A model generated the notes under the pieces. It saw only the letters and a list, made by a program, of their open reading frames with translations, was not told the origin of the DNA and did no database searches. Positions 11,395 to 34,880 of a DNA stretch of 64,000 nt are shown one piece after another (position 1 is the first letter of the stretch; each line of letters starts with the position of its first letter). The position numbers were made by a program, and so were the translations under genes. The stretch is from positions 1 to 64,000 of the IMG/VR virus record IMGVR_UViG_3300013093_000017; one strand, 5' to 3'.

Positions 11395-12078
11395 ATGTAT
11401 ATCTATAAAATAACAAACAATATTAACGGTCGCTGGTATATAGGCAAGCATAATGGAACTGATCCTACCTATATGGGATCAGGTAAGTTGCTTAAACAGG
11501 CTTATAAGAAATACGGAAAAGAGAACTTTAAAAAAGAAATACTCGAAACTTGTGATACTGAGGAACAATTAAATTTTTGTGAAGCCCGTTGGATAGCTTT
11601 AACCGGTGCTATAACTGATCCTAACAGTTATAACTTAGTAGATGGTGGTACAGGTGGCGACCGCAGTAAATTTATTGCATATAGTAAAATTGATTATAGC
11701 AATCATAAATGTCAGGGTGCTACTGCTTGGTACCGTTCATTAACTCCTGAAGAAAGATCACAAAAACATGCTCGCACTGCGGAAAGTGTTGCTAAAGGTT
11801 GGTATGTAAGCCGCATAGACGATCCTACTGAAATTTATGTACACAATATTGCTAAATGGTGTAAAGAACATGGAGTAGGGACATCATTTGTTTCTGAATC
11901 AAATAATCCCAATCATCCATTATTTCAAAAACAATCGAAAGGTTGGCGTATTAGAAGATCGGATATGCCTGCGCTACCTCCATATGAAAATCGCCGAAAG
12001 ATCGGCCATCCTAATATTGCCTGTAAAGGCAGAGGTTGGAAACTCGTAGATGGAAAACGTGTTTGGTACGATAAATAG
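11395..12078 (+). mobile_element. Free-standing GIY-YIG homing endonuclease (Seg-like)
   Basis: MYIYKITNNINGRWYIGKH...YMGSG...YNL; late motif GCTAAATA upstream. Confidence 0.85.
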
Positions 12079-24407: not shown

Positions 24408-24539
24408 ATGAAAACTAAGAAACTAATACGCAAGATGTACCGTGCCAGCGTTAGGCATAACCTAAAGAAACAAAAGAAATTGTGGCTTAAGATCCTTAAG
24501 AAAAGTTTGGAACATAAGCACACAGAAGTAGTACAATAA
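24408..24539 (+). CDS. 43 aa basic small protein
   Basis: TAAGGAG RBS; MKTKKLIRKMYRASVRHNLKK...; paralogue at 53834. Confidence 0.6.
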   Translation: MKTKKLIRKMYRASVRHNLKKQKKLWLKILKKSLEHKHTEVVQ

Positions 24540-24540
24540 A

Positions 24541-24795
24541 GGATTGTTGTAATTCCTTCAACGTGAAGGCATGGCGGACGGGGATTCGATTTCCCCCTCC
24601 TACACTAAGGGTATTTGAAATAGTATCTTTAGTGTGGGAGACCAGGTTTCGACGGCGTGAGATAGCGAACAAGGCAACACAGTAGGCGATGACTGTAAAT
24701 CAAGCAAAATCTATAAATGCAAGCAATGATAGCATTTTCGCACTTGCGGCCTAAAATCCGTTGTGCCGAGTTTAACTAACTTGGGAACAGAATAG
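24541..24795 (+). ncRNA. ssrA: Two-piece (circularly permuted) tmRNA
   Basis: T-arm and acceptor 3' strand CTCCTAC-A (24597-24604) come before the 5' strand GTGGGAG (24634-24640) with G3.U70, joined by an intervening hairpin; tag frame 24719-24754 ASNDSIFALAA*. Confidence 0.88.
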
Positions 24796-25572
24796 TTACA
24801 GGGTCTTCGGACCCTGTTCTTTTGATAATTTATTCTGTTTTCTAGTCTCTAACATTTTTTTGACAGATTCAGGATTTTTCATAGGATTTAATCGACTGTC
24901 GCCAAATCCTGTATCAGATTTTCCTTTATTCCACGCAGGTGCTACCCTGTTGTGCTTTTTTCCAACTTGCGATGGGCGTATTTTGGCCTGATATCGATTC
25001 CGGCAAGTCGCATTGCAATAGTAATGTTCTTTAGGTGAATGATGGCAAAACTCTTCATAGATTAATTCAGCATTACAGTTAGTACACTTATAATATCGGA
25101 GTTCTTTTGGTTTCTTTTTTGTTTTATTAATTTCTCGCATTATTTCTGCTTGCCGACTTCTTCTTTCATCCGATGCAGATACCCAAGATCGTTTAGCCTG
25201 CAATCCGTCTGCATTATGATTATTTGATATCATATAGGCAATGTGCTCTTTGCGAACAATTTCATAACATTTAGAATTATTACGTTTTAATCGATCACAC
25301 ATAAGTTTAAAGGCCTGTGATTGCTTGCCACCGTATGCTTTCCATAATAATCTATGGGCAACATAATGTTGTCGTAGGGTTAATGCTGCTTTATTCCAGG
25401 GATATTTCTTAAATGATTTAAATTCTGGGAATAAATCAGACGATTTAGGGCATATATGATGATCTTCAGTTTCAAGTAGATGAGTAGTAACAATGCATTG
25501 ATTAATAAATTTAATATATCTATTAAGGTAATGTGAATTATGAGGTTTAGATTTTAATATATCAGCAAACAT
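24796..25572 (-). mobile_element. Free-standing HNH homing endonuclease (Mob-like)
   Basis: HHICPK...N...LTLRQHYVAHRLL; CxxC...CxxxC; TATAAATA on the minus strand at 25593-25600. Confidence 0.8.
24798..24823. terminator. Terminator overlapping the HNH gene 3' end
   Basis: ACAGGGTC-TTCG-GACCCTGT followed by a T tract. Confidence 0.8.
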
Positions 25573-25720: not shown

Positions 25721-27364
<1,644 letters not shown>

Positions 27365-28037: not shown

Positions 28038-30257
28038 ATGATTAATATATACGCCTTCACTTATCCAGGTGCTATGCAAAAATATATCAAACAAGGATAT
28101 ATTCTTGCCAAGGTAGGTGACTCAATACGTGATACAGAGATACGTATGCGTGAACAAGGTGCTTCTGCCGAGTACGAAGGAAAAATTAATATTTTTTCTT
28201 GGAACAATCTAAAGAATATTAAGCGTGACTACCAGGTTCACCGTGTGTTAACTAAACGTGGCCTACACAATCAAGAAGGGCTTGGTACAGAATGGTTTAA
28301 AATCCCTGCTACGACCATCGAAGAGGTCAAACAATATCTAGACGATATCATTACAGGATTTGAAAATCGCAAAGTACGTAATAACATTAAACTACGTACC
28401 CTACAACACCGCAAGTTAGATCAAGCAATGGCCATTATCGATAAGTGTCCAACGGACGCATCGATCCTTGCTAACCTTTGCCCAAGATTTGGCAAAACAA
28501 TTTGGGCTTTGAGCTTATTCAATCGTATATCGGAAAAATACGGCAATCGTGTTATGCTATTGCCTGCATACTGGTTAAGCGTACACAGCTCATTTATTAA
28601 CGAGCTAGATGAATACGCAGAGTTCACTGATATTGCTGAGATCGATGTAAACGATCCAAATGCTGAACAATTAGCCAATGATTATCTAGCACAGGGTATG
28701 CGTATTGTAGTACCAATGAGCCTACACGGTGACCTTGCTGAATGGCAGACCAAACACACCTGGTTATCCAATATCCCTAACAACGATATTTTCATGTTTG
28801 CAGATGAAGGTGACTTTGGGACTCACACAGAAAATCAAGTGGCTAAACTAAAGTATATATTTGACCACGGTACTAATACCAAAAAAGGTAAATTTGTGTC
28901 AGTATATGCTTCAGGCACCAACGTACAACGTCTAGCCAAATGTTCTAAGCACATTGATGGTGTGTTATACACAGCATACTCTCAGCTCGAACTAACAGAA
29001 CCAGGTATTGTTAAACGTAAATTCTATTGTTTAGAAGTAGACACGTTAAAGAAACAAGTAGAGTCTTTGGGACACGAGGTACAGGCATCTTGGATTAAAC
29101 TAAATGCTAAACCTTTGGCCAATAAGGCGTTCTTTGAACAACTAGGCTTATCACTGTTTGGTTACGATTCATTACGTCGCGAGCTTAATCTTTCAGCAAT
29201 GGCAGATGAGCCAGTTTACTGTGCTATGATGTTAACATCTGCAGATAAGAAAGGCATGAAGCAGATTTCTGAGATCATGCAACACAGTATGCCAGACATT
29301 CACGTTAAGGTGCTTAATGGTGATTTCACTACCAACAAGAATGCCGAAACTGAAACAATTCGTGAGATCAATGAAGCAAAGATTGCGGGTAAGAAAGGTG
29401 TGTTAATTATCGCTAATCAAATGGGCAGTCGTAGTTACAGTATTCCAGAAATACAGGCAACTATAATTGCTTTTGATCGCGGGTCAGTTGATGCTACTAC
29501 GCAAAAGGTCAGTCGCTGTCTAACACCTGGTGTTAAGTACGATGGCGAGGACAAAGAGTTTGGTATGATTGTAGACCTATCATTTGATCCAAACCGTGCT
29601 GAAAATATTGAACGTCTAATCTTAGAGGAAGCCATACAGGTACAACGTGATGGAGAAGATGCCCTAGACTTTACACAAGCAGTTAAGTATGTGCTGTCTA
29701 GTGTAGACATGTTTAAGATGAATCAATATGGACTGCCAGTTGAAGTCACTGAAGAAGACCTATTTAAGATCTTTGGTGATAACGAAACCATGCTCAAAGT
29801 AGCTGATATATCAGTCGACCTTGCGGCTGCAATTGAATCGGGTATGTTTAATGTCTTGGCCGCAGTAACAGGTGGCGGCAAAGAGTCTGCTAAGAAAAAA
29901 GATATCGTAGGCGAAGGTGTTAAGAATTCAATTAAAGAAGGTGGCAGTAATGCTACTAACAATCTATCCGATGCAGATAAACGCAAAATGGAAGACATTA
30001 TTAACAATGCTATACGTGCGTTGAATATGAGTGCTACCAGTGTATATAATTTAGCTAATCTTGACGGTAATAGTTATCGAGAGTGTATTGCAATTATTAA
30101 TGCTGATGCAGAGTTAGATGCAGAGTTTAAAGAATTCTTTGGTATTACTGCTGGCAATACTTTATCATTATTAGATAACAAAATCTTAAATGAAGCTATC
30201 TTAGATGTTATTGTACAAAATAGCAAACCAAAAGAGATTGACAACCTATTCATTTGA
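28038..30257 (+). CDS. GIY-YIG/T5orf172-like domain fused to a divergent SF2 helicase-like domain (R-M-like subunit)
   Basis: N-terminal KVGDS.RDTEIRMREQ...GTEWF; CPRFGKT Walker A-like, ADEGDFG Walker B-like, QKVSRCLTP motif VI-like. Confidence 0.65.
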   Translation: MINIYAFTYPGAMQKYIKQGYILAKVGDSIRDTEIRMREQGASAEYEGKINIFSWNNLKNIKRDYQVHRVLTKRGLHNQEGLGTEWFKIPATTIEEVKQYLDDIITGFENRKVRNNIKLRTLQHRKLDQAMAIIDKCPTDASILANLCPRFGKTIWALSLFNRISEKYGNRVMLLPAYWLSVHSSFINELDEYAEFTDIAEIDVNDPNAEQLANDYLAQGMRIVVPMSLHGDLAEWQTKHTWLSNIPNNDIFMFADEGDFGTHTENQVAKLKYIFDHGTNTKKGKFVSVYASGTNVQRLAKCSKHIDGVLYTAYSQLELTEPGIVKRKFYCLEVDTLKKQVESLGHEVQASWIKLNAKPLANKAFFEQLGLSLFGYDSLRRELNLSAMADEPVYCAMMLTSADKKGMKQISEIMQHSMPDIHVKVLNGDFTTNKNAETETIREINEAKIAGKKGVLIIANQMGSRSYSIPEIQATIIAFDRGSVDATTQKVSRCLTPGVKYDGEDKEFGMIVDLSFDPNRAENIERLILEEAIQVQRDGEDALDFTQAVKYVLSSVDMFKMNQYGLPVEVTEEDLFKIFGDNETMLKVADISVDLAAAIESGMFNVLAAVTGGGKESAKKKDIVGEGVKNSIKEGGSNATNNLSDADKRKMEDIINNAIRALNMSATSVYNLANLDGNSYRECIAIINADAELDAEFKEFFGITAGNTLSLLDNKILNEAILDVIVQNSKPKEIDNLFI

Positions 30258-30296: not shown

Positions 30297-31343
30297 ATGA
30301 AATTTGCAGTTGATCTATCAAAAGGTGTATTAGGTAATGCAGATAGTACTGAGTTGTGGACTGATATCATTTCACATATTCCGGATTCAGTACTACTTAC
30401 TCCAAATGTTCGTATCTTATCAGTAGCCTGCGGTCATTGTACCGAAGCTGTCATTATTGCTAAACGCATGCTAGCCCTGGGTATAAGTAAAGAAACAGTG
30501 CGTAATTCAGTTTGGTTGATTGACAAATACCGAGTATTTACAAATCAAGCTAAATCTACACACGGATTCACTAATGTAATCACTGCTGATTTTATGGAAT
30601 GGGAAATAGATATGAAATTTGATGTAATCGTAGGCAATCCTCCTTATCAAAGAACAGATAATAAAGCCAAACGCTGGACGTTATGGGAAGAATTTATCAA
30701 AAAGTCATTAGGTATAGCTGACATTGTAGCAATGGTAGTGCCGCAAAGTTTAACCAGTCCAAACGCTTCATTTGAATCGATTAAAGATAAATGCGCTGTA
30801 TTAAACATCAACGTTAGTAAATATTTCAATGTAGGTAGCACCTTTTGTTATTTTATTGCAGATAATAGACAAAAAATCACCACCACTAAAATTATTACAG
30901 ACAAAAAAGAATATATACGAGATATTAGTAATTTGCCATTTTTGCCTATGAATATTACTGATCAAAGTCTACAACAACTTGATGACCTAATAGCTCGTCC
31001 TAAACGGGTATGGAAGCGTGGAGAATTACATACTAGCAATGCTAATTTATTTTCTATCAATGGTCAATATCCTGTTATGCATACAAATGCACAATCACTC
31101 AAATCTAATATCGAGCATAAGAACAAAACAAAAATTCGAGTAGCGGTGTCTCTTAGTGGGTACCCTACATTTCGTGTACTTCAAAATGAATATGCAACCC
31201 AGGCATGTTTTTGGACAGAATTTAGTAATTTAGCCGATGCTCAAACATTTGCAGACGAATGCAATGGAACAGATATTCAAGAACTTTTGAAAATATTTAA
31301 ATGGTCAGGATGGAATAGTAAGGAAGTGATTCAATGTCTGTAA
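30297..31343 (+). CDS. N6-adenine DNA methyltransferase-like protein (Eco57I/TaqI-like) with target-recognition region
   Basis: KFDVIVGNPPY catalytic motif; degenerate motif I (SVACGHCTE). Confidence 0.75.
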   Translation: MKFAVDLSKGVLGNADSTELWTDIISHIPDSVLLTPNVRILSVACGHCTEAVIIAKRMLALGISKETVRNSVWLIDKYRVFTNQAKSTHGFTNVITADFMEWEIDMKFDVIVGNPPYQRTDNKAKRWTLWEEFIKKSLGIADIVAMVVPQSLTSPNASFESIKDKCAVLNINVSKYFNVGSTFCYFIADNRQKITTTKIITDKKEYIRDISNLPFLPMNITDQSLQQLDDLIARPKRVWKRGELHTSNANLFSINGQYPVMHTNAQSLKSNIEHKNKTKIRVAVSLSGYPTFRVLQNEYATQACFWTEFSNLADAQTFADECNGTDIQELLKIFKWSGWNSKEVIQCL

Positions 31344-31786
31344 ACAGTGTTATCAAGCACCTGCGCGATCGTGAATACATGAGTGGGGTTGAACGTGATA
31401 AGTTGCGTGTTAAAGCAACAGGTGAAGTGTTTACTCCAACACCGCTGGTACAGGAAATACTTGATCAATTACCGCAGGATATATTCCAAGATCCAACTAA
31501 GACATTCCTTGATCCTAGTTGTGGAGATGGACAGTTTTTGAGCGAAGTGTTAATACGCAAAGTTGAAAACGGTATTGATTTTGAAACAGCGTTAAGTACC
31601 ATCTATGGTGTGGACCTAATGCAAGACAATGTAGAACTGTGCAGAGAACGCTTGCTGTGCGGACAAGAGCATCTACGTCATATTGTAGAAAAGAATATTG
31701 TATGTCACAATGCACTTACATATGATTATCAGTTTGGTGAACCAGAAATCTTTGGCTACGGGAATTTTGAGGTAGTTGCAAAATAA
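31334..31786 (+). CDS. Short DNA methyltransferase SAM-binding subunit
   Basis: GEVFTP, FLDPSCGDGQFL, IYGVDL; no NPPY. Confidence 0.8.
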   Translation: MSVNSVIKHLRDREYMSGVERDKLRVKATGEVFTPTPLVQEILDQLPQDIFQDPTKTFLDPSCGDGQFLSEVLIRKVENGIDFETALSTIYGVDLMQDNVELCRERLLCGQEHLRHIVEKNIVCHNALTYDYQFGEPEIFGYGNFEVVAK

Positions 31787-31878: not shown

Positions 31879-32457
31879 ATGAAAAAGTTTTTATTAGCAG
31901 TACTTTTAGCAGTAGCATCAGTATCAGCATTTGCTGACGCAGGTAATTATGCATCAGCAGGCATCGACTTTAAAGACAAGCAAGATTCAACTAACAACCA
32001 CACAGTATATGGTTTAACAGTTGGGCATGACTTTGGCAACACATGGAAAGTTGAAGCACGCATGGAAGACGAAACTGTTAACGGTGGCGCACACGAAGGT
32101 CTAGTTCAACTTAAAGTGAACAAAGACATCGGTACTTGGTATGGTGTTACTCCATACGCAGGGGTAGCAGTTGGTGAGAAAGACAAATCAACTACTAACT
32201 TTATCTATTACCTAGGTGAAGTTGGCGCAAAGTACACAGTATTGCCAGGTTTAACAGCGTTTGTTCAAGAACGTCTACGTACACCATTTAACGAAAACTT
32301 AGATGGCCATACAGGCTACGGTTACAAGACTTGGGAAACATCAGTAGGTGCAAAATACGCAATTAACAAATCAAATGCTGTTGGCCTACGATTTGCTGTA
32401 GAGCGTGGAGATAGCGCATACAACACAGTTGGTGTTAACTACACATACTCATTCTAA
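31879..32457 (+). CDS. Outer-membrane beta-barrel protein
   Basis: Signal peptide, alternating amphipathic strands, C-terminal YTYSF beta-signal. Confidence 0.8.
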   Translation: MKKFLLAVLLAVASVSAFADAGNYASAGIDFKDKQDSTNNHTVYGLTVGHDFGNTWKVEARMEDETVNGGAHEGLVQLKVNKDIGTWYGVTPYAGVAVGEKDKSTTNFIYYLGEVGAKYTVLPGLTAFVQERLRTPFNENLDGHTGYGYKTWETSVGAKYAINKSNAVGLRFAVERGDSAYNTVGVNYTYSF

Positions 32458-32476
32458 TTTAATTTAGAATATATTC

Positions 32477-32515
32477 AAAAAGGCCTTGACGGGCCTTTTT
32501 GTTTGGCTATATAAT
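32477..32515 (+). promoter_or_regulatory. Terminator hairpin whose loop carries the -35 of the tRNA promoter
   Basis: AAAAAGGCC-TTGAC-GGGCCTTTTT; TTGACG-N18-TATAAT. Confidence 0.55.
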
Positions 32516-32523
32516 ATGTATAT

Positions 32524-32597
32524 GCGCTTGAAGCTGATCGAATAGCAAGAGCTTCTAAACCTCCAGGTAGTGGGTTTGACTCCCACCAAGCGCACCA
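32524..32597 (+). tRNA. Atypical tRNA: anticodon CUA (amber) in canonical register, or degenerate Arg(UCU)
   Basis: Acceptor GCGCTTG/CAAGCGC-A-CCA, D stem GCTG/TAGC, T stem GTGGG/CCCAC, variable loop AGGTA; anticodon loop TTCTAAA; anticodon stem has only 3 pairs. Confidence 0.75.
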
Positions 32598-32614: not shown

Positions 32615-32914
32615 ATGAATTTCAAACCATTACAAGATAAGATTTTAGTTAAACGTATTGAAAACGCTAATGTGTCGCAAGGCGGTATATTAGTACCAGA
32701 TGCCTCAGTTGAGAAACCAAATCAGGGTGTTGTACTGGCAGTGGGTCCGGGTAAGTATCTGGCCAATGGAACATTTCAACCAATGACATTAACAGTCAAC
32801 GATAAGATCTTATTCACCAAAGGCGCAGGTGCTCCTGTTAAAGTGGATGATGAAGAATACGTTGTTCTGAAAGAAGACGATGTTTATGCCGTGATAGGAA
32901 CTGTGGCTAAATAG
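32615..32914 (+). CDS. groES: Co-chaperonin GroES
   Basis: FKPLQDKILVKR, GGILVP, VLAVGPG, LKEDDVYAVI. Confidence 0.95.
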   Translation: MNFKPLQDKILVKRIENANVSQGGILVPDASVEKPNQGVVLAVGPGKYLANGTFQPMTLTVNDKILFTKGAGAPVKVDDEEYVVLKEDDVYAVIGTVAK

Positions 32915-32985: not shown

Positions 32986-33810
32986 ATGATGTACTCAAAC
33001 AAAATGGCAGCCGCCATCAAAGTCAACGGAAAAGTTTTACGCGAATTTAAGGATACAGTTTATATCCCATTTGGCAGTCAATATTCCATCTTAGTAAAAA
33101 ATCTAAACACAGTACGAGCAGTGGTCCATATTGAGCTAGACGGTGAAGAAGTAGTTGCCGGAGGTCTAGTAGTTGGCGCTGGACAGGAAGTAGATTTAGA
33201 ACGCTGGGTCAAAGCTGACAATCTAAAGAAAGGCAATAAGTTTAAATTTATTGAGCGTACTGCCAACATTGAACAACATCGCGGTGTTGGTCTTGAAGAT
33301 GGTATTGTTCGCATTACCTATCAATTTGAGCAGGTAATGAATCCAGTTATAGGAATTCACCGTGGTAATATGCCCGGAGTTATTACAACAACTAACCCTT
33401 GGGATACTCATGGCATTCTGCGCAGCTCCACATCAGGTGGGCAAAGTGCTAGTTACAGTTCTTCTATGATTAGCACGGCAGCATTTAACAATGTAGCAGT
33501 TAGTGCCACTTCTGCAACCGGATTGCCTGGTGTAACAGCATCAATGAAACATGAGCAGAGTAACGATGCAGGTATTACTGTACCGGGTAGTAAGAGTGAT
33601 CAAAAATTCCAAACTGCCAGTTGGTTTCCTACAGAATCCGAAACACACTCAATGGTGTTTAAACTATTAGGTGCTACTGAAGATAATCAACCTGTGTATA
33701 AGGCAGTGACAGTCAAAGCAAAACCTAAGTGTGTGACCTGTGGCAAACAGAATAAGGCAACTGCTAAATTCTGCGCCGAATGTGGCACAGCATTAGAAAT
33801 ATTTGCATAA
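32986..33810 (+). CDS. Hypothetical protein with C-terminal zinc ribbon
   Basis: CVTCG...FCAECG. Confidence 0.7.
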   Translation: MMYSNKMAAAIKVNGKVLREFKDTVYIPFGSQYSILVKNLNTVRAVVHIELDGEEVVAGGLVVGAGQEVDLERWVKADNLKKGNKFKFIERTANIEQHRGVGLEDGIVRITYQFEQVMNPVIGIHRGNMPGVITTTNPWDTHGILRSSTSGGQSASYSSSMISTAAFNNVAVSATSATGLPGVTASMKHEQSNDAGITVPGSKSDQKFQTASWFPTESETHSMVFKLLGATEDNQPVYKAVTVKAKPKCVTCGKQNKATAKFCAECGTALEIFA

Positions 33811-34227: not shown

Positions 34228-34304
34228 TGGATGTCCTAGAACGAGCAGCACGATTAACAGAAATATATGAAGTAAAATAAATATAAATTTAAGGAGAAGT
34301 AACA

Positions 34305-34880
34305 ATGTTATAGATTGGTAAACAAATTGAATATAAATGTGAAGATGTAGTTTTTCACTTTAACAAGAAACATCTCGAAGACCCAACTGTTCCTATGTGG
34401 GTTGTCAAAAGCCATGGTGTTACATTTTATGTAAATCATGTATCAGCAGAAATTCCGTGGAGTACTAAAGAAACTCCAAATAACGATCATACCAAAGGTA
34501 GTATCAAATTTAAGAAATGTAAGTTAAGCATTAGTCGTGAGAACGAGGCAACCTTGTCGCCGCTTGGTCTAATGGATAGATTACTATCTCACCCAAAAAT
34601 TTCCACACGTATTATCGCTAGCAGAAACGGACATTTCCACGATGCTCTACGTGCAGGTGAGTATAAGCACAGTGATATTAAAGAAATTGGCGGCGGCTGC
34701 GGCAGTGCGTTTATTATCTGTGACCTAACGGATAAGAACGAATCGCTTATGGCTGCATTAAAGTATTCGGGCAAGTTCCGCATACTTGCGCCAAACGAAC
34801 GTTACTATATTGACTACGAAGCTGGTAATGACCTGTACGAATATGACGAGGAGGAGTTTGATGATGACGATCTTTATTAA
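34305..34880 (+). CDS. Hypothetical protein with in-frame TAG at codon 3 (readthrough or disrupted allele)
   Basis: AAGGAG at 34291-34296; ATG TTA TAG, then 27 open codons in frame with ORF 34395-34880. Confidence 0.6.

What the first reader, a model, noticed from the sequence alone, without database searches (positions are those of the whole stretch)
32524..32597. tRNA with a CUA (amber) anticodon in canonical register, apparently derived from tRNA-Arg(UCU)
Seen: counting from the D stem (A26; AGAGC; loop TTCTAAA; CCTCC; variable AGGTA; T stem) puts CTA (32555-32557) at positions 34-36, with U33 and A37. Reading TCT as the anticodon instead needs no base 26 and a 6-nt variable loop, and leaves only 2 stem pairs. 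The D loop is short, the T loop is TTTGACT and the anticodon stem has 2 mismatches. It has its own promoter and an encoded CCA. Inference: a one-base shift of an Arg(UCU) loop made a weak amber suppressor, or a dual-register tRNA, in a code-11 genome.
Basis: partly seen in the sequence, partly recalled or inferred. Interest (0 to 1): 0.75.

Follow-up and report, generated by a model that had tools for sequence, protein, structure and literature searches.

The report
Phage amber-suppressor tRNA with partner gene
This is a real, conserved phage tRNA that reads the UAG stop codon, and it travels with one conserved phage gene that carries a UAG just after its start codon, so the tRNA probably acts as the key that lets that single gene be translated.

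Summary
Window 32524-32597 is a tRNA with CUA at positions 34-36, an encoded CCA and its own sigma-70-type promoter (Rfam 45.4 bits against a cut-off of 29). ARAGORN finds it only at a relaxed threshold.

It is not a shifted or decaying Arg(UCU) copy. It belongs to a large family of phage tRNA(CUA): 52 distinct sequences, with relatives in the cultured phages XacN1, Xoo-sp13 and RHph_I1_18. Stems covary, the 19-56 tertiary pair covaries perfectly, and CUA and A73 are invariant. The odd traits (A8, non-Watson-Crick 31-39, A27.C43) recur across the family.

The phage uses code 11, and 16% of its stops are TAG. One exception is new. A conserved gene 1.7 kb downstream (34305-34880) reads RBS-ATG-TTA-TAG and continues in frame for 188 codons. 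In 79 of 79 homologous loci chosen by protein alone, the stop before the conserved region is TAG, never TAA or TGA. In 78 of them it follows a 2-6 codon leader. A tRNA(CUA) lies in 67 of 78 of these loci. Close relatives without the tRNA at this locus also lack the gene there.

Best reading: a two-part cassette in which the tRNA gates translation of one gene. Decoding, the inserted amino acid and the protein's function are untested.

The parts
32476..32501 (+). Terminator hairpin after the OMP-like gene. Its loop and 3' arm contain the -35 box of the tRNA promoter.
   Evidence: Terminator-like hairpin found by the scan. It is identical in 10 related loci and homologous upstream of the tRNA in L054, L062 and L063.
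32486..32515 (+). Sigma-70-type promoter: TTGACG, 18 nt, TATAAT. The -10 box ends 8 nt before tRNA position 1.
   Evidence: 11 of 12 matches. In 38 of 48 distinct family contexts a -10-like hexamer ends 6-12 nt before the tRNA, most often 8 nt.
32524..32597 (+). tRNA(CUA) with encoded CCA. The anticodon is at 32555-32557.
   Evidence: Rfam 45.4 bits. ARAGORN -ps90 calls tRNA(cta). Family covariation. Independent contigs.
32615..32914 (+). groES (Cpn10), lying between the tRNA and its partner gene. It ends in TAG here.
   Evidence: The homologs carry Pfam PF00166. The stop is TAG in the window and TAA in 10 of 10 relatives that lack the tRNA.
32986..33810 (+). Gene for a 274-aa protein with a C-terminal zinc ribbon. 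Its homologs follow the tRNA directly in L060 and L062.
   Evidence: Pfam Zn_Ribbon_1, E 1.3e-6. Synteny.
34291..34296 (+). Shine-Dalgarno AAGGAG, 8 nt before the leader ATG of the partner gene.
   Evidence: Read directly from the sequence. An equivalent RBS is present in 78 of 79 homologous loci.
34305..34313 (+). Leader ATG-TTA followed by the in-frame amber codon TAG (34311-34313).
   Evidence: The TAG is conserved in 79 of 79 loci chosen by protein homology and in 9 of 9 earlier loci.
34314..34880 (+). Body of the amber-gated gene: 188 codons plus the stop. The first canonical in-frame start is only at codon 28 (34395).
   Evidence: Third-position-dominated variation in the 23 codons after the TAG. 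Residues 5-16 form a confident beta-strand in the AF2 model. Alignments A2 and A4.

Best explanation
The element is a functional phage-encoded amber-suppressor tRNA. It belongs to a widespread family that forms a two-part cassette with one conserved gene. The tRNA is transcribed from its own promoter with a leader of one or two bases. It is presumably charged by a host synthetase; the amino acid is unknown. It then decodes a single conserved UAG, which sits 2-6 codons after the start codon of the partner gene (34305-34880 in the window). Without the tRNA, ribosomes that start at the only RBS-served ATG terminate after a di- to hexapeptide. With it, they read on into a 188-residue two-domain protein. 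The UAG is therefore a translational gate that ties this protein's synthesis to the supply of the phage's own tRNA(CUA). The gate could act as a timer or threshold, or, by analogy with prfB, as a sensor of UAG decoding. Shown: tRNA family membership, structural selection, the conserved TAG and its co-location with the tRNA, and the coding nature of the sequence after the TAG. Inferred: that this tRNA decodes that TAG, the regulatory purpose, and the amino acid inserted.
For: tRNA authenticity:
- Rfam score above the cut-off.
- 52 distinct family sequences. The acceptor stem is paired in 363 of 364 cells, the T stem in 260 of 260, and pairs 28-42, 29-41 and 30-40 in 156 of 156, with many compensatory changes.
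- A73 is invariant (52 of 52) and so is CUA.
- The 19-56 tertiary pair covaries perfectly: GG with C56 in 46, G-A with U56 in 5, G-U with A56 in 1.
- The nearest variants (L054 group, L096 group) differ from the window copy mainly by paired substitutions.

The partner gene:
- The window reads RBS-ATG-TTA-TAG and then an open frame.
- It is the only such arrangement in the 230 kb.
- In 80 loci fetched by protein homology alone, the first upstream in-frame stop is TAG in 79 of 79 evaluable loci, never TAA or TGA. The phage's stops are 63% TAA and 16% TAG.
- The TAG is preceded by 20 different leader peptides.
- It is followed by ATT, ATC or ATA, and by AAC in RHph_I1_18. Variation after it is of the coding type, 2.65: 1.51: 7.85 by codon position, and 14 of 55 segments have no canonical start there.

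Co-location:
- A tRNA(cta) lies in 67 of 78 loci, on the gene's strand in every locus where strand was recorded and often 24-50 nt upstream. Seven of the 11 without one have under 900 nt of upstream DNA.
- In the cultured Rhizobium phage RHph_I1_18, the TAG-bearing gene is unannotated and ends 15 nt before the annotated tRNA-Pyl(cta).
- Ten groES relatives without the tRNA at this locus also lack the gene there.
Against: - No experiment or RNA or protein data shows suppression or the read-through product.
- The aminoacylation identity is unknown. No synthetase or release-factor gene was found in the 65%-complete record.
- The window copy has a weak anticodon stem (3 Watson-Crick pairs), A8 and no GG. 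Free-energy folding of the bare RNA prefers an alternative pairing of the D and anticodon regions.
- 41 other phage genes end in TAG without obvious avoidance or tandem stops, so a strong suppressor would have side effects.
- Four loci with 3-4 kb of flank show the TAG gene without a detectable tRNA(cta).
- One homolog (L103) has an ordinary ATG start.
- Atu_ph07 and Phosso carry the domain without a TAG.
- The codon after the TAG is nearly always an AUH codon, which could in principle serve for re-initiation.
Confidence: 0.7

Rival explanations
1. The tRNA is a general, low-level amber suppressor with no dedicated target. The TAG in the partner gene merely ends a regulatory mini-ORF, and ribosomes re-initiate at the adjacent AUU, AUC or AUA codon.
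For: The codon after the TAG is an AUH codon in nearly all loci. The mini-ORFs are very short. 41 phage genes, including groES, end in TAG and would also be read through. The authors of XacN1 found no target for its CUA tRNAs.
Against: A coupling mini-ORF could end in any stop, yet TAG is used in 79 of 79 loci while TAA is the phage's commonest stop. RHph_I1_18 has AAC after the TAG. The window and L101 have four further codons before the conserved Ile. ATT, ATC and ATA alternate as synonymous Ile codons. The gene and the tRNA(CUA) are physically linked across distant phages.
Confidence: 0.15
2. One reading: a recent one-base register shift of a tRNA-Arg(UCU) copy produced a weak or dual-register suppressor, or a decaying pseudo-tRNA.
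For: The phage's own Arg(UCU) is its best internal match (57 identities) and shares the 9-mer GAGCUUCUA. Acceptor stems starting GCGC with A73 resemble proteobacterial tRNA-Arg (from general knowledge). The window copy has degenerate-looking features.
Against: All 52 family members have CUA in the canonical register. The arm aligns without gaps to the CUA tRNAs of XacN1 and Xoo-sp13 but needs four gaps against Arg(UCU). Stems and the 19-56 tertiary pair covary. An identical 74-mer variant sits in at least four different flanking contexts. ArgRS determinant C35 is U here.
Confidence: 0.03
3. A non-decoding tRNA-like element in the 5' UTR of groES. It would act as an RNase P or RNase E processing site, or as a 5' stabiliser of the chaperonin mRNA.
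For: It lies between the conserved groES promoter and the groES RBS, and is absent from 10 relatives that keep both. Transcription probably starts 1-2 nt before G1. The bare RNA is not predicted to form the full cloverleaf.
Against: In other phages the same tRNA precedes unrelated genes. A processing signal would not need an invariant CUA anticodon, the loop YUCUAAA, A73 and CCA across 52 sequences.
Confidence: 0.05

Closest known systems
tRNA-Sup(CUA) genes annotated in standard-code jumbo phages (Xanthomonas phage XacN1, Cronobacter phage GAP32, Pectobacterium phage CBB, Yersinia phage fHe-Yen9-04; unannotated in Xoo-sp13)
   Same: A phage-encoded tRNA with CUA at positions 34-36, A37 A38 and an encoded CCA, in a genome that otherwise uses TAG as a stop. 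The XacN1 copies share the AGAGC...CUCC arm with A27.C43 and a 31-39 mismatch.
   Different: In those phages no target is known; for XacN1, reading through 18 amber stops revealed nothing (PMC5852040). tblastn found no homolog of the gated gene in them. Here a conserved partner gene with an N-terminal UAG accompanies the tRNA. The window copy also has A8, G18-A19 with U56 and a C.C 31-39 pair.
Stop-codon recoding (code 15, TAG to Gln) in crAss-like, Lak and other gut phages with suppressor tRNAs (Borges et al., bioRxiv 10.1101/2021.08.26.457843)
   Same: A phage-encoded tRNA(CUA) lets phage genes with in-frame TAG be translated in a standard-code host. The idea that this times or gates gene expression is shared.
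   Different: There, many late, structural and lysis genes carry many in-frame TAGs, and TAG is depleted as a stop. Here exactly one codon in one gene is involved, always in the first 3-7 codons. TAG remains 16% of stops and no release-factor gene was found.
prfB (RF2) autoregulation through an early in-frame UGA (general knowledge, not tested here)
   Same: A single early in-frame stop codon whose decoding outcome sets the expression of the gene that contains it.
   Different: prfB bypasses the stop by a +1 frameshift and senses RF2. Here the frame is unchanged and a dedicated suppressor tRNA is encoded alongside. Whether the protein acts on UAG decoding is unknown.
Laboratory amber suppressors of E. 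coli (supE, supF, su7) (general knowledge)
   Same: CUA anticodon, the A36-A37-A38 context typical of tRNAs that read U-starting codons, and charging by a host synthetase.
   Different: Those are single-mutation derivatives of cellular tRNAs. This is an old, diversified natural family with its own promoter and a conserved non-Watson-Crick 31-39 pair.
Promoter-early stem-loop (PeSL) cassettes of T4-type phages (general knowledge)
   Same: A terminator hairpin fused to an early-type promoter, conserved at gene-module boundaries and flanking a variable cargo.
   Different: Homology to T4 PeSLs was not tested. The motif occurs only once in this window.

Membership tests
tRNA (Rfam RF00005, elongator type) | Score above the curated gathering threshold, with a full-length match | tested here: met
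   45.4 bits against 29, model positions 1-71 of 71.
tRNA (Rfam RF00005, elongator type) | Cloverleaf stems supported by covariation among relatives | tested here: met
   52 distinct relatives. The acceptor stem is paired in 363 of 364 cells and the T stem in 260 of 260. Pairs 28-42, 29-41 and 30-40 are always paired, with compensatory changes.
tRNA (Rfam RF00005, elongator type) | Conserved elbow and core nucleotides: U8, G18 G19, T54 Psi55 C56 | tested here: not met
   The window copy has A8, G18 A19 and U56. However, 19-56 stays Watson-Crick (A-U) and covaries across the family, and A8 occurs in 24 of 52 members.
tRNA (Rfam RF00005, elongator type) | Seven-nucleotide anticodon loop with U33 and a purine at 37 | tested here: met
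   Loop UUCUAAA.
Phage-encoded amber suppressor tRNA | CUA at positions 34-36 in the canonical register | tested here: met
   Infernal alignment and the ARAGORN drawing. CUA is invariant in the family.
Phage-encoded amber suppressor tRNA | Homology to suppressor tRNAs annotated in cultured phages | tested here: met
   57 of 76 identities to the Xoo-sp13 tRNA(cta), with no gap in the anticodon arm. Xoo-sp13 is in turn 88% identical to the XacN1 tRNA-Sup. The window sequence alone gave no significant blastn hit in the phage collection.
Phage-encoded amber suppressor tRNA | Aminoacylation and decoding of UAG in vivo | not testable with these tools
   This needs a reporter assay, an acid gel or tRNA-seq, and mass spectrometry.
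tRNA-Arg(UCU) | UCU at positions 34-36, with C35 as the ArgRS determinant | tested here: not met
   Position 35 is U. A UCU reading needs a shifted register with only 2 stem pairs.
tRNA-Arg(UCU) | Closer to Arg(UCU) genes than to other tRNA classes | tested here: not met
   Identity to the phage's own Arg(UCU) is 57 of 79 with 4 gaps in the anticodon arm, no better than to foreign CUA tRNAs. Canonical family members hit Asn, Lys and Phe tRNAs.
tRNA-Pyl (the label ARAGORN gives) | Six-pair anticodon stem, 3-nt variable loop and one base between the acceptor and D stems (general knowledge) | tested here: not met
   There is a 5-position anticodon stem, a 5-nt variable loop and two bases (A8, A9). 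The label only reflects the anticodon.
Stop-codon-recoded (code 15) phage | Many genes interrupted by in-frame TAG, and coding density restored by reading TAG through | tested here: not met
   Code 11 already covers 89% of the record with ORFs of at least 100 aa. Reading TAG through adds no more than reading TGA through. Only one gated ORF was found in 230 kb.
Stop-codon-recoded (code 15) phage | Depletion of TAG as a stop, and a phage release-factor gene | tested here: not met
   TAG ends 41 of 263 called genes. There is no RF-1 domain in the record, which is 65% complete.

The most novel reading that the evidence does not exclude
A minimal one-codon genetic-code switch. A family of phages that use the standard code keeps a dedicated tRNA(CUA) whose conserved job is to open a single UAG gate. 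The gate sits in the first 3-7 codons of one partner gene, and both are often encoded on the same transcript. This would be a natural orthogonal tRNA/codon expression gate. It could also be a stable intermediate on the road to genome-wide TAG recoding. The gated protein may itself act on tRNA or termination, since distant homologs sit beside PTH2 and a Pnkp-like RNA-repair gene.
Probability: 0.6. Interest if true: 0.85.

Novelty: new variant of a known kind. Interest (0 to 1): 0.8.

Why it matters
Suppressor tRNAs are regularly annotated in cultured phages that use the standard code. No target has been identified for them; the XacN1 authors looked and found none.

Here a specific, conserved and testable target appears: a UAG directly after the start codon of one gene. 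It is linked to the tRNA across freshwater metagenomic phages and a cultured Rhizobium phage.

If confirmed, this is a natural single-gene amber gate. It bears on how stop-codon recoding begins in phages and on phage gene timing, and it could serve as a ready-made orthogonal switch.

It also exposes annotation blind spots:
- ARAGORN misses this tRNA at default settings.
- Gene callers start the partner gene 27 codons too late or skip it. It is unannotated in RHph_I1_18, and the ESM Atlas holds it only from residue 28.

Tried and rejected
- ARAGORN at default settings found no tRNA here. Only -ps90 did.
- blastn of the locus and of the tRNA against cultured phages gave nothing useful. An exact 28-mer of the T arm and acceptor end found nothing in viral contigs.
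- Genome-wide TAG recoding was rejected. Coding density is normal under code 11. The only long same-frame TAG junction (12076) is a true stop followed by an RBS and ATG.
- Excess tandem stops or short extensions after TAG stops: none seen.
- Release-factor, GlnRS/GluRS-class and LysRS/AspRS/AsnRS-class domains are absent from the record.
- Function of the gated protein: no Pfam or PHROG family. The protein atlas gave only weak, unnamed neighbours. Foldseek on PDB and AFDB gave nothing significant. VIA-align gave only a generic ferredoxin-like (ACT/RRM-like) match for residues 97-173, at Z of 6 or less.
I removed those rows and did not send them elsewhere.
- Free-energy folding of the single sequence does not reproduce the D and anticodon arms. 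I rely on covariation instead.
- Whole-record searches of five tRNA-bearing fragments for the gene were mostly uninformative, because the records are 6-32% complete.
- Literature searches found no description of the tRNA-plus-gated-gene pair.

Full report
SETTING

The window is the first 64 kb of a 229,675-bp IMG/VR virus record, which CheckV rates 65% complete. It comes from a freshwater metagenome. The record is a jumbo-phage fragment. In the window it encodes GroEL (25745-27364), GroES (32615-32914) and a beta-type tmRNA (24515-24845). A cluster of 24 ordinary tRNAs, all with an encoded CCA, lies at 72-81 kb.

THE OBSERVATION

- Rfam's tRNA model matches 32524-32594 end to end at 45.4 bits, against a gathering score of 29.
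- The alignment places CUA (32555-32557) in the anticodon position, with U33, A37 and A38. It marks two non-standard pairs in the anticodon stem: 27-43 (A.C) and 31-39 (C.C).
- ARAGORN misses the gene at default settings. At -ps90 it draws the same cloverleaf with anticodon cta.
- A promoter, TTGACG-18-TATAAT (32486-32515, 11 of 12 matches), ends 8 nt before position 1.
- Contigs of two independent lake runs reproduce the sequence without a difference.

IS THE PHAGE RECODED?

No. Under code 11, ORFs of at least 100 aa already cover 89% of the record. Reading TAG through adds no more than reading TGA through. A simple gene call gives 263 genes ending in TAA (165), TGA (57) or TAG (41). The one long same-frame junction across a TAG (12076) is a genuine stop followed by an RBS and an ATG. 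No release-factor, GlnRS/GluRS-class or LysRS/AspRS/AsnRS-class domain is present.

THE LOCUS IN CLOSE RELATIVES

GroES homologs of 80-91% identity led to ten loci from four lineages. All keep the same terminator hairpin and the same promoter upstream of groES, base for base. None has the tRNA: in the window, about 74 extra bases sit between the -10 box and the groES RBS. No tRNA is detectable within 2.5 kb in those loci. Taken alone, this suggested a lineage-specific insertion.

A LARGE tRNA FAMILY

Searching viral contigs for the 15-mer of the anticodon arm plus a loose T-loop motif returned 18 loci. Every one is a tRNA that ARAGORN calls cta, 16 of them at default settings, with acceptor stems like the window's.

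One variant (the L054 group) differs from the window copy at four positions that form two compensatory pairs. It occurs as an identical 74-mer in at least four different flanking contexts. In the same lakes it is about eight times more abundant than the window version.

Cultured phages carry relatives, annotated tRNA-Sup, tRNA-Pyl or tRNA-OTHER: XacN1 (two copies), GAP32, CBB and fHe-Yen9-04. Xoo-sp13 has an unannotated one. The XacN1 copies have the same AGAGC...CUCC arm, with A27.C43 and a mismatched 31-39 pair.

Across 52 distinct sequences:
- the acceptor stem is paired in 363 of 364 cells and the T stem in 260 of 260;
- pairs 28-42, 29-41 and 30-40 are paired in all, with several pair types each;
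- A73, CUA, C2-G71 and G30-C40 are invariant;
- 31-39 is non-Watson-Crick in 46 of 52 (C.A 27, A.C 10, C.C 9);
- A8 occurs in 24 of 52;
- the tertiary 19-56 pair covaries without exception: GG with C56 in 46, G-A with U56 in 5 (including the window), and G-U with A56 in 1.

The odd features of the window copy are therefore family traits or compensated changes, not decay.

A -10-like hexamer ends 6-12 nt before the tRNA (most often 8 nt) in 38 of 48 distinct contexts, so the fused promoter is also a family trait.

THE Arg(UCU) IDEA

The phage's own Arg(UCU) is its best internal match. It gives 57 identities over 79 aligned columns, with four gaps in the anticodon arm. The Xoo-sp13 CUA tRNA gives 57 of 76 with no gap in that arm.

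With the anticodon left free, the same arm sequence turns up in phage tRNAs with anticodons CCA, UCA, GCA and CAA. All of them have A36. This fits the A36-A37-A38 context of tRNAs that read U-starting codons rather than an Arg origin. The 'UCU' one base upstream is inherent to U33-C34-U35.

A recent register shift is excluded. A remote Arg ancestry of the family remains possible.

THE PARTNER GENE

Listing the TAG-terminated genes showed that groES itself ends in TAG here, whereas its ten relatives end in TAA.

The genes downstream of the tRNA in other phages then revealed a shared pattern. In the window, an AAGGAG box (34291-34296) is followed after 8 nt by ATG TTA TAG (34305-34313). The frame then stays open for 188 codons to 34880. 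The first canonical start in that frame is only at codon 28 (34395), which is where ORF finders begin the gene.

Nine homologs (48-60% identity) all show RBS, ATG, one to three codons, then TAG, then I-E-Y/L-A/K-C and a conserved VFHFNKKHLED block. All lie 86-1915 nt downstream of the tRNA(CUA) on the same strand.

An unbiased test used the protein alignment to fetch the 80 best of 376 relatives in IMG/VR.
- The first in-frame stop upstream of the conserved region is TAG in 79 of 79 evaluable loci, never TAA or TGA.
- In 78 of them it follows an RBS-served ATG and a leader of 2-6 codons (20 different leaders). One locus (L103) has an ordinary ATG start instead.
- A tRNA(cta) lies within the fetched 4 kb flanks in 67 of 78 loci. 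It was on the gene's strand in every locus where strand was recorded and is often 24-50 nt upstream. Seven of the eleven exceptions have under 900 nt of upstream DNA.
- The 23 codons after the TAG vary mostly at third positions (2.65: 1.51: 7.85). Of 55 distinct versions, 14 have no ATG, GTG or TTG there.
- In the AlphaFold model (pLDDT 82.5, pTM 0.70), residues 5-16 form a confident strand of the N-terminal domain.

So the region is coding, and it can only be reached from the ATG before the TAG.

In the cultured Rhizobium phage RHph_I1_18, the gene reads MSEFM-TAG-NESCREVIFHFNK... It is unannotated and ends 15 nt before the annotated tRNA-Pyl(cta).

In the whole 230 kb of this phage, it is the only ORF with such a gate. 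The ten groES relatives without the tRNA also lack this gene at the locus. There, groES is followed directly by the homolog of the window gene near 35.1 kb. The nearest relative of the gated gene (L096, 72%) has the order OMP-like gene, tRNA(cta), a small ORF, then the gated gene. The window therefore looks like that arrangement with groES and a zinc-ribbon gene inserted between the two parts.

INTERPRETATION

The simplest account is a two-part cassette. The tRNA(CUA) decodes the single UAG and so gates translation of the partner protein.

The main rival is termination of a mini-ORF followed by re-initiation at the adjacent AUH codon. It does not explain:
- why the stop is always TAG in phages whose commonest stop is TAA;
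- why AAC follows the TAG in RHph_I1_18;
- why the gene and the tRNA stay linked in distant phages.

The conserved weak 31-39 pair may tune the tRNA's decoding strength, which would limit read-through of the 41 ordinary TAG stops. This is conjecture.

The protein's function is unknown. It has no Pfam or PHROG family and no significant fold match. Its C-terminal half is a generic ferredoxin-like domain. In Phosso and Atu_ph07, the N-terminal domain occurs without a TAG inside a longer protein. In Phosso that protein lies two genes after a PTH2 peptidyl-tRNA hydrolase and just before a kinase-phosphoesterase of the RNA-repair type; the Atu_ph07 neighbours were not scanned. This hints at tRNA-related biology.

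COMPARISON WITH WHAT IS KNOWN

Suppressor tRNAs in standard-code phages are known but have no known target (PMC5852040). Suppressor tRNAs that serve genome-wide TAG recoding are known in gut phages, where acquisition of the tRNA is proposed to precede recoding. I found no paper describing a conserved single-codon gate paired with the tRNA.

I therefore file the tRNA as a member of the known kind 'phage amber-suppressor tRNA', and the cassette as a new variant of stop-codon recoding. Decoding, charging and purpose remain to be shown experimentally.

Noticed in passing
window 24515-24845: A phage-encoded tmRNA (ARAGORN permuted type, tag ASNDSIFALAA; Rfam beta_tmRNA 165.5 bits). In related phages a tmRNA lies 0.7-2 kb from the tRNA(CUA) (L048, L053, L059, L063). 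A ribosome-rescue RNA and a stop-codon-reading tRNA therefore recur together.
   Followed up: partly
window 32912-32914: groES ends in TAG, followed by 15 sense codons and a second TAG. All ten groES relatives that lack the upstream tRNA end in TAA. This may be chance, since TAG is 16% of stops, or it may yield an extended GroES.
   Followed up: partly
window 32476-32515: The terminator hairpin carries the -35 box of the next promoter in its loop and 3' arm. The whole module is base-identical in ten relatives whose proteins are only 80-91% identical. It resembles the promoter/stem-loop shuffling cassettes of T4-type phages. It occurs once in the window.
   Followed up: partly
window 25745-27364 and 32615-32914: The phage encodes both GroEL and GroES, but about 5 kb apart rather than as an operon.
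   Followed up: no
window 31879-32457: A phage-encoded outer-membrane beta-barrel protein with a signal peptide (Pfam OMP_b-brl, E 3.3e-8) lies just upstream of the tRNA. The homologous gene precedes the tRNA in L063 and L096.
   Followed up: partly
window 30297-31786: Two adjacent ORFs look like DNA methyltransferase pieces; an NPPY motif is visible in the first. The preceding 739-aa ORF (28038-30257) is helicase-like by eye. None of these was tested against family libraries.
   Followed up: no
window 11395-12078: An ORF whose N-terminus resembles a GIY-YIG homing endonuclease lies directly before a 555-aa tail-fibre or pectate-lyase-like gene. Not tested.
   Followed up: no
G000:C1:85405-85499 and 76755-76846 (outside the window): ARAGORN reports a 95-nt tRNA-like gene with an uninterpretable two-base anticodon. 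It also reports a 92-nt tRNA(UAU) with a long extra arm or insert.
   Followed up: no
L094 1534-4059 (Sinorhizobium phage Phosso); L095 (Agrobacterium phage Atu_ph07): In both phages a TAG-free homolog of the gated protein's N-terminal domain forms the C-terminal half of a 173-176 aa protein. In Phosso it lies two genes after a PTH2 peptidyl-tRNA hydrolase and directly before an AAA_33 plus metallophosphoesterase gene of the RNA-repair type. Atu_ph07 shows the same gene order, with a phosphatase annotated downstream, but its neighbours were not scanned.
   Followed up: partly
window 32529 and 32571 (read laying, runs X2-X4): A sister variant of the tRNA (U6 to A and U50 to C, each with its compensating partner) from other phages coexists in the same lakes at about eight times the depth. 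It breaks the assembly graph inside the tRNA.
   Followed up: yes
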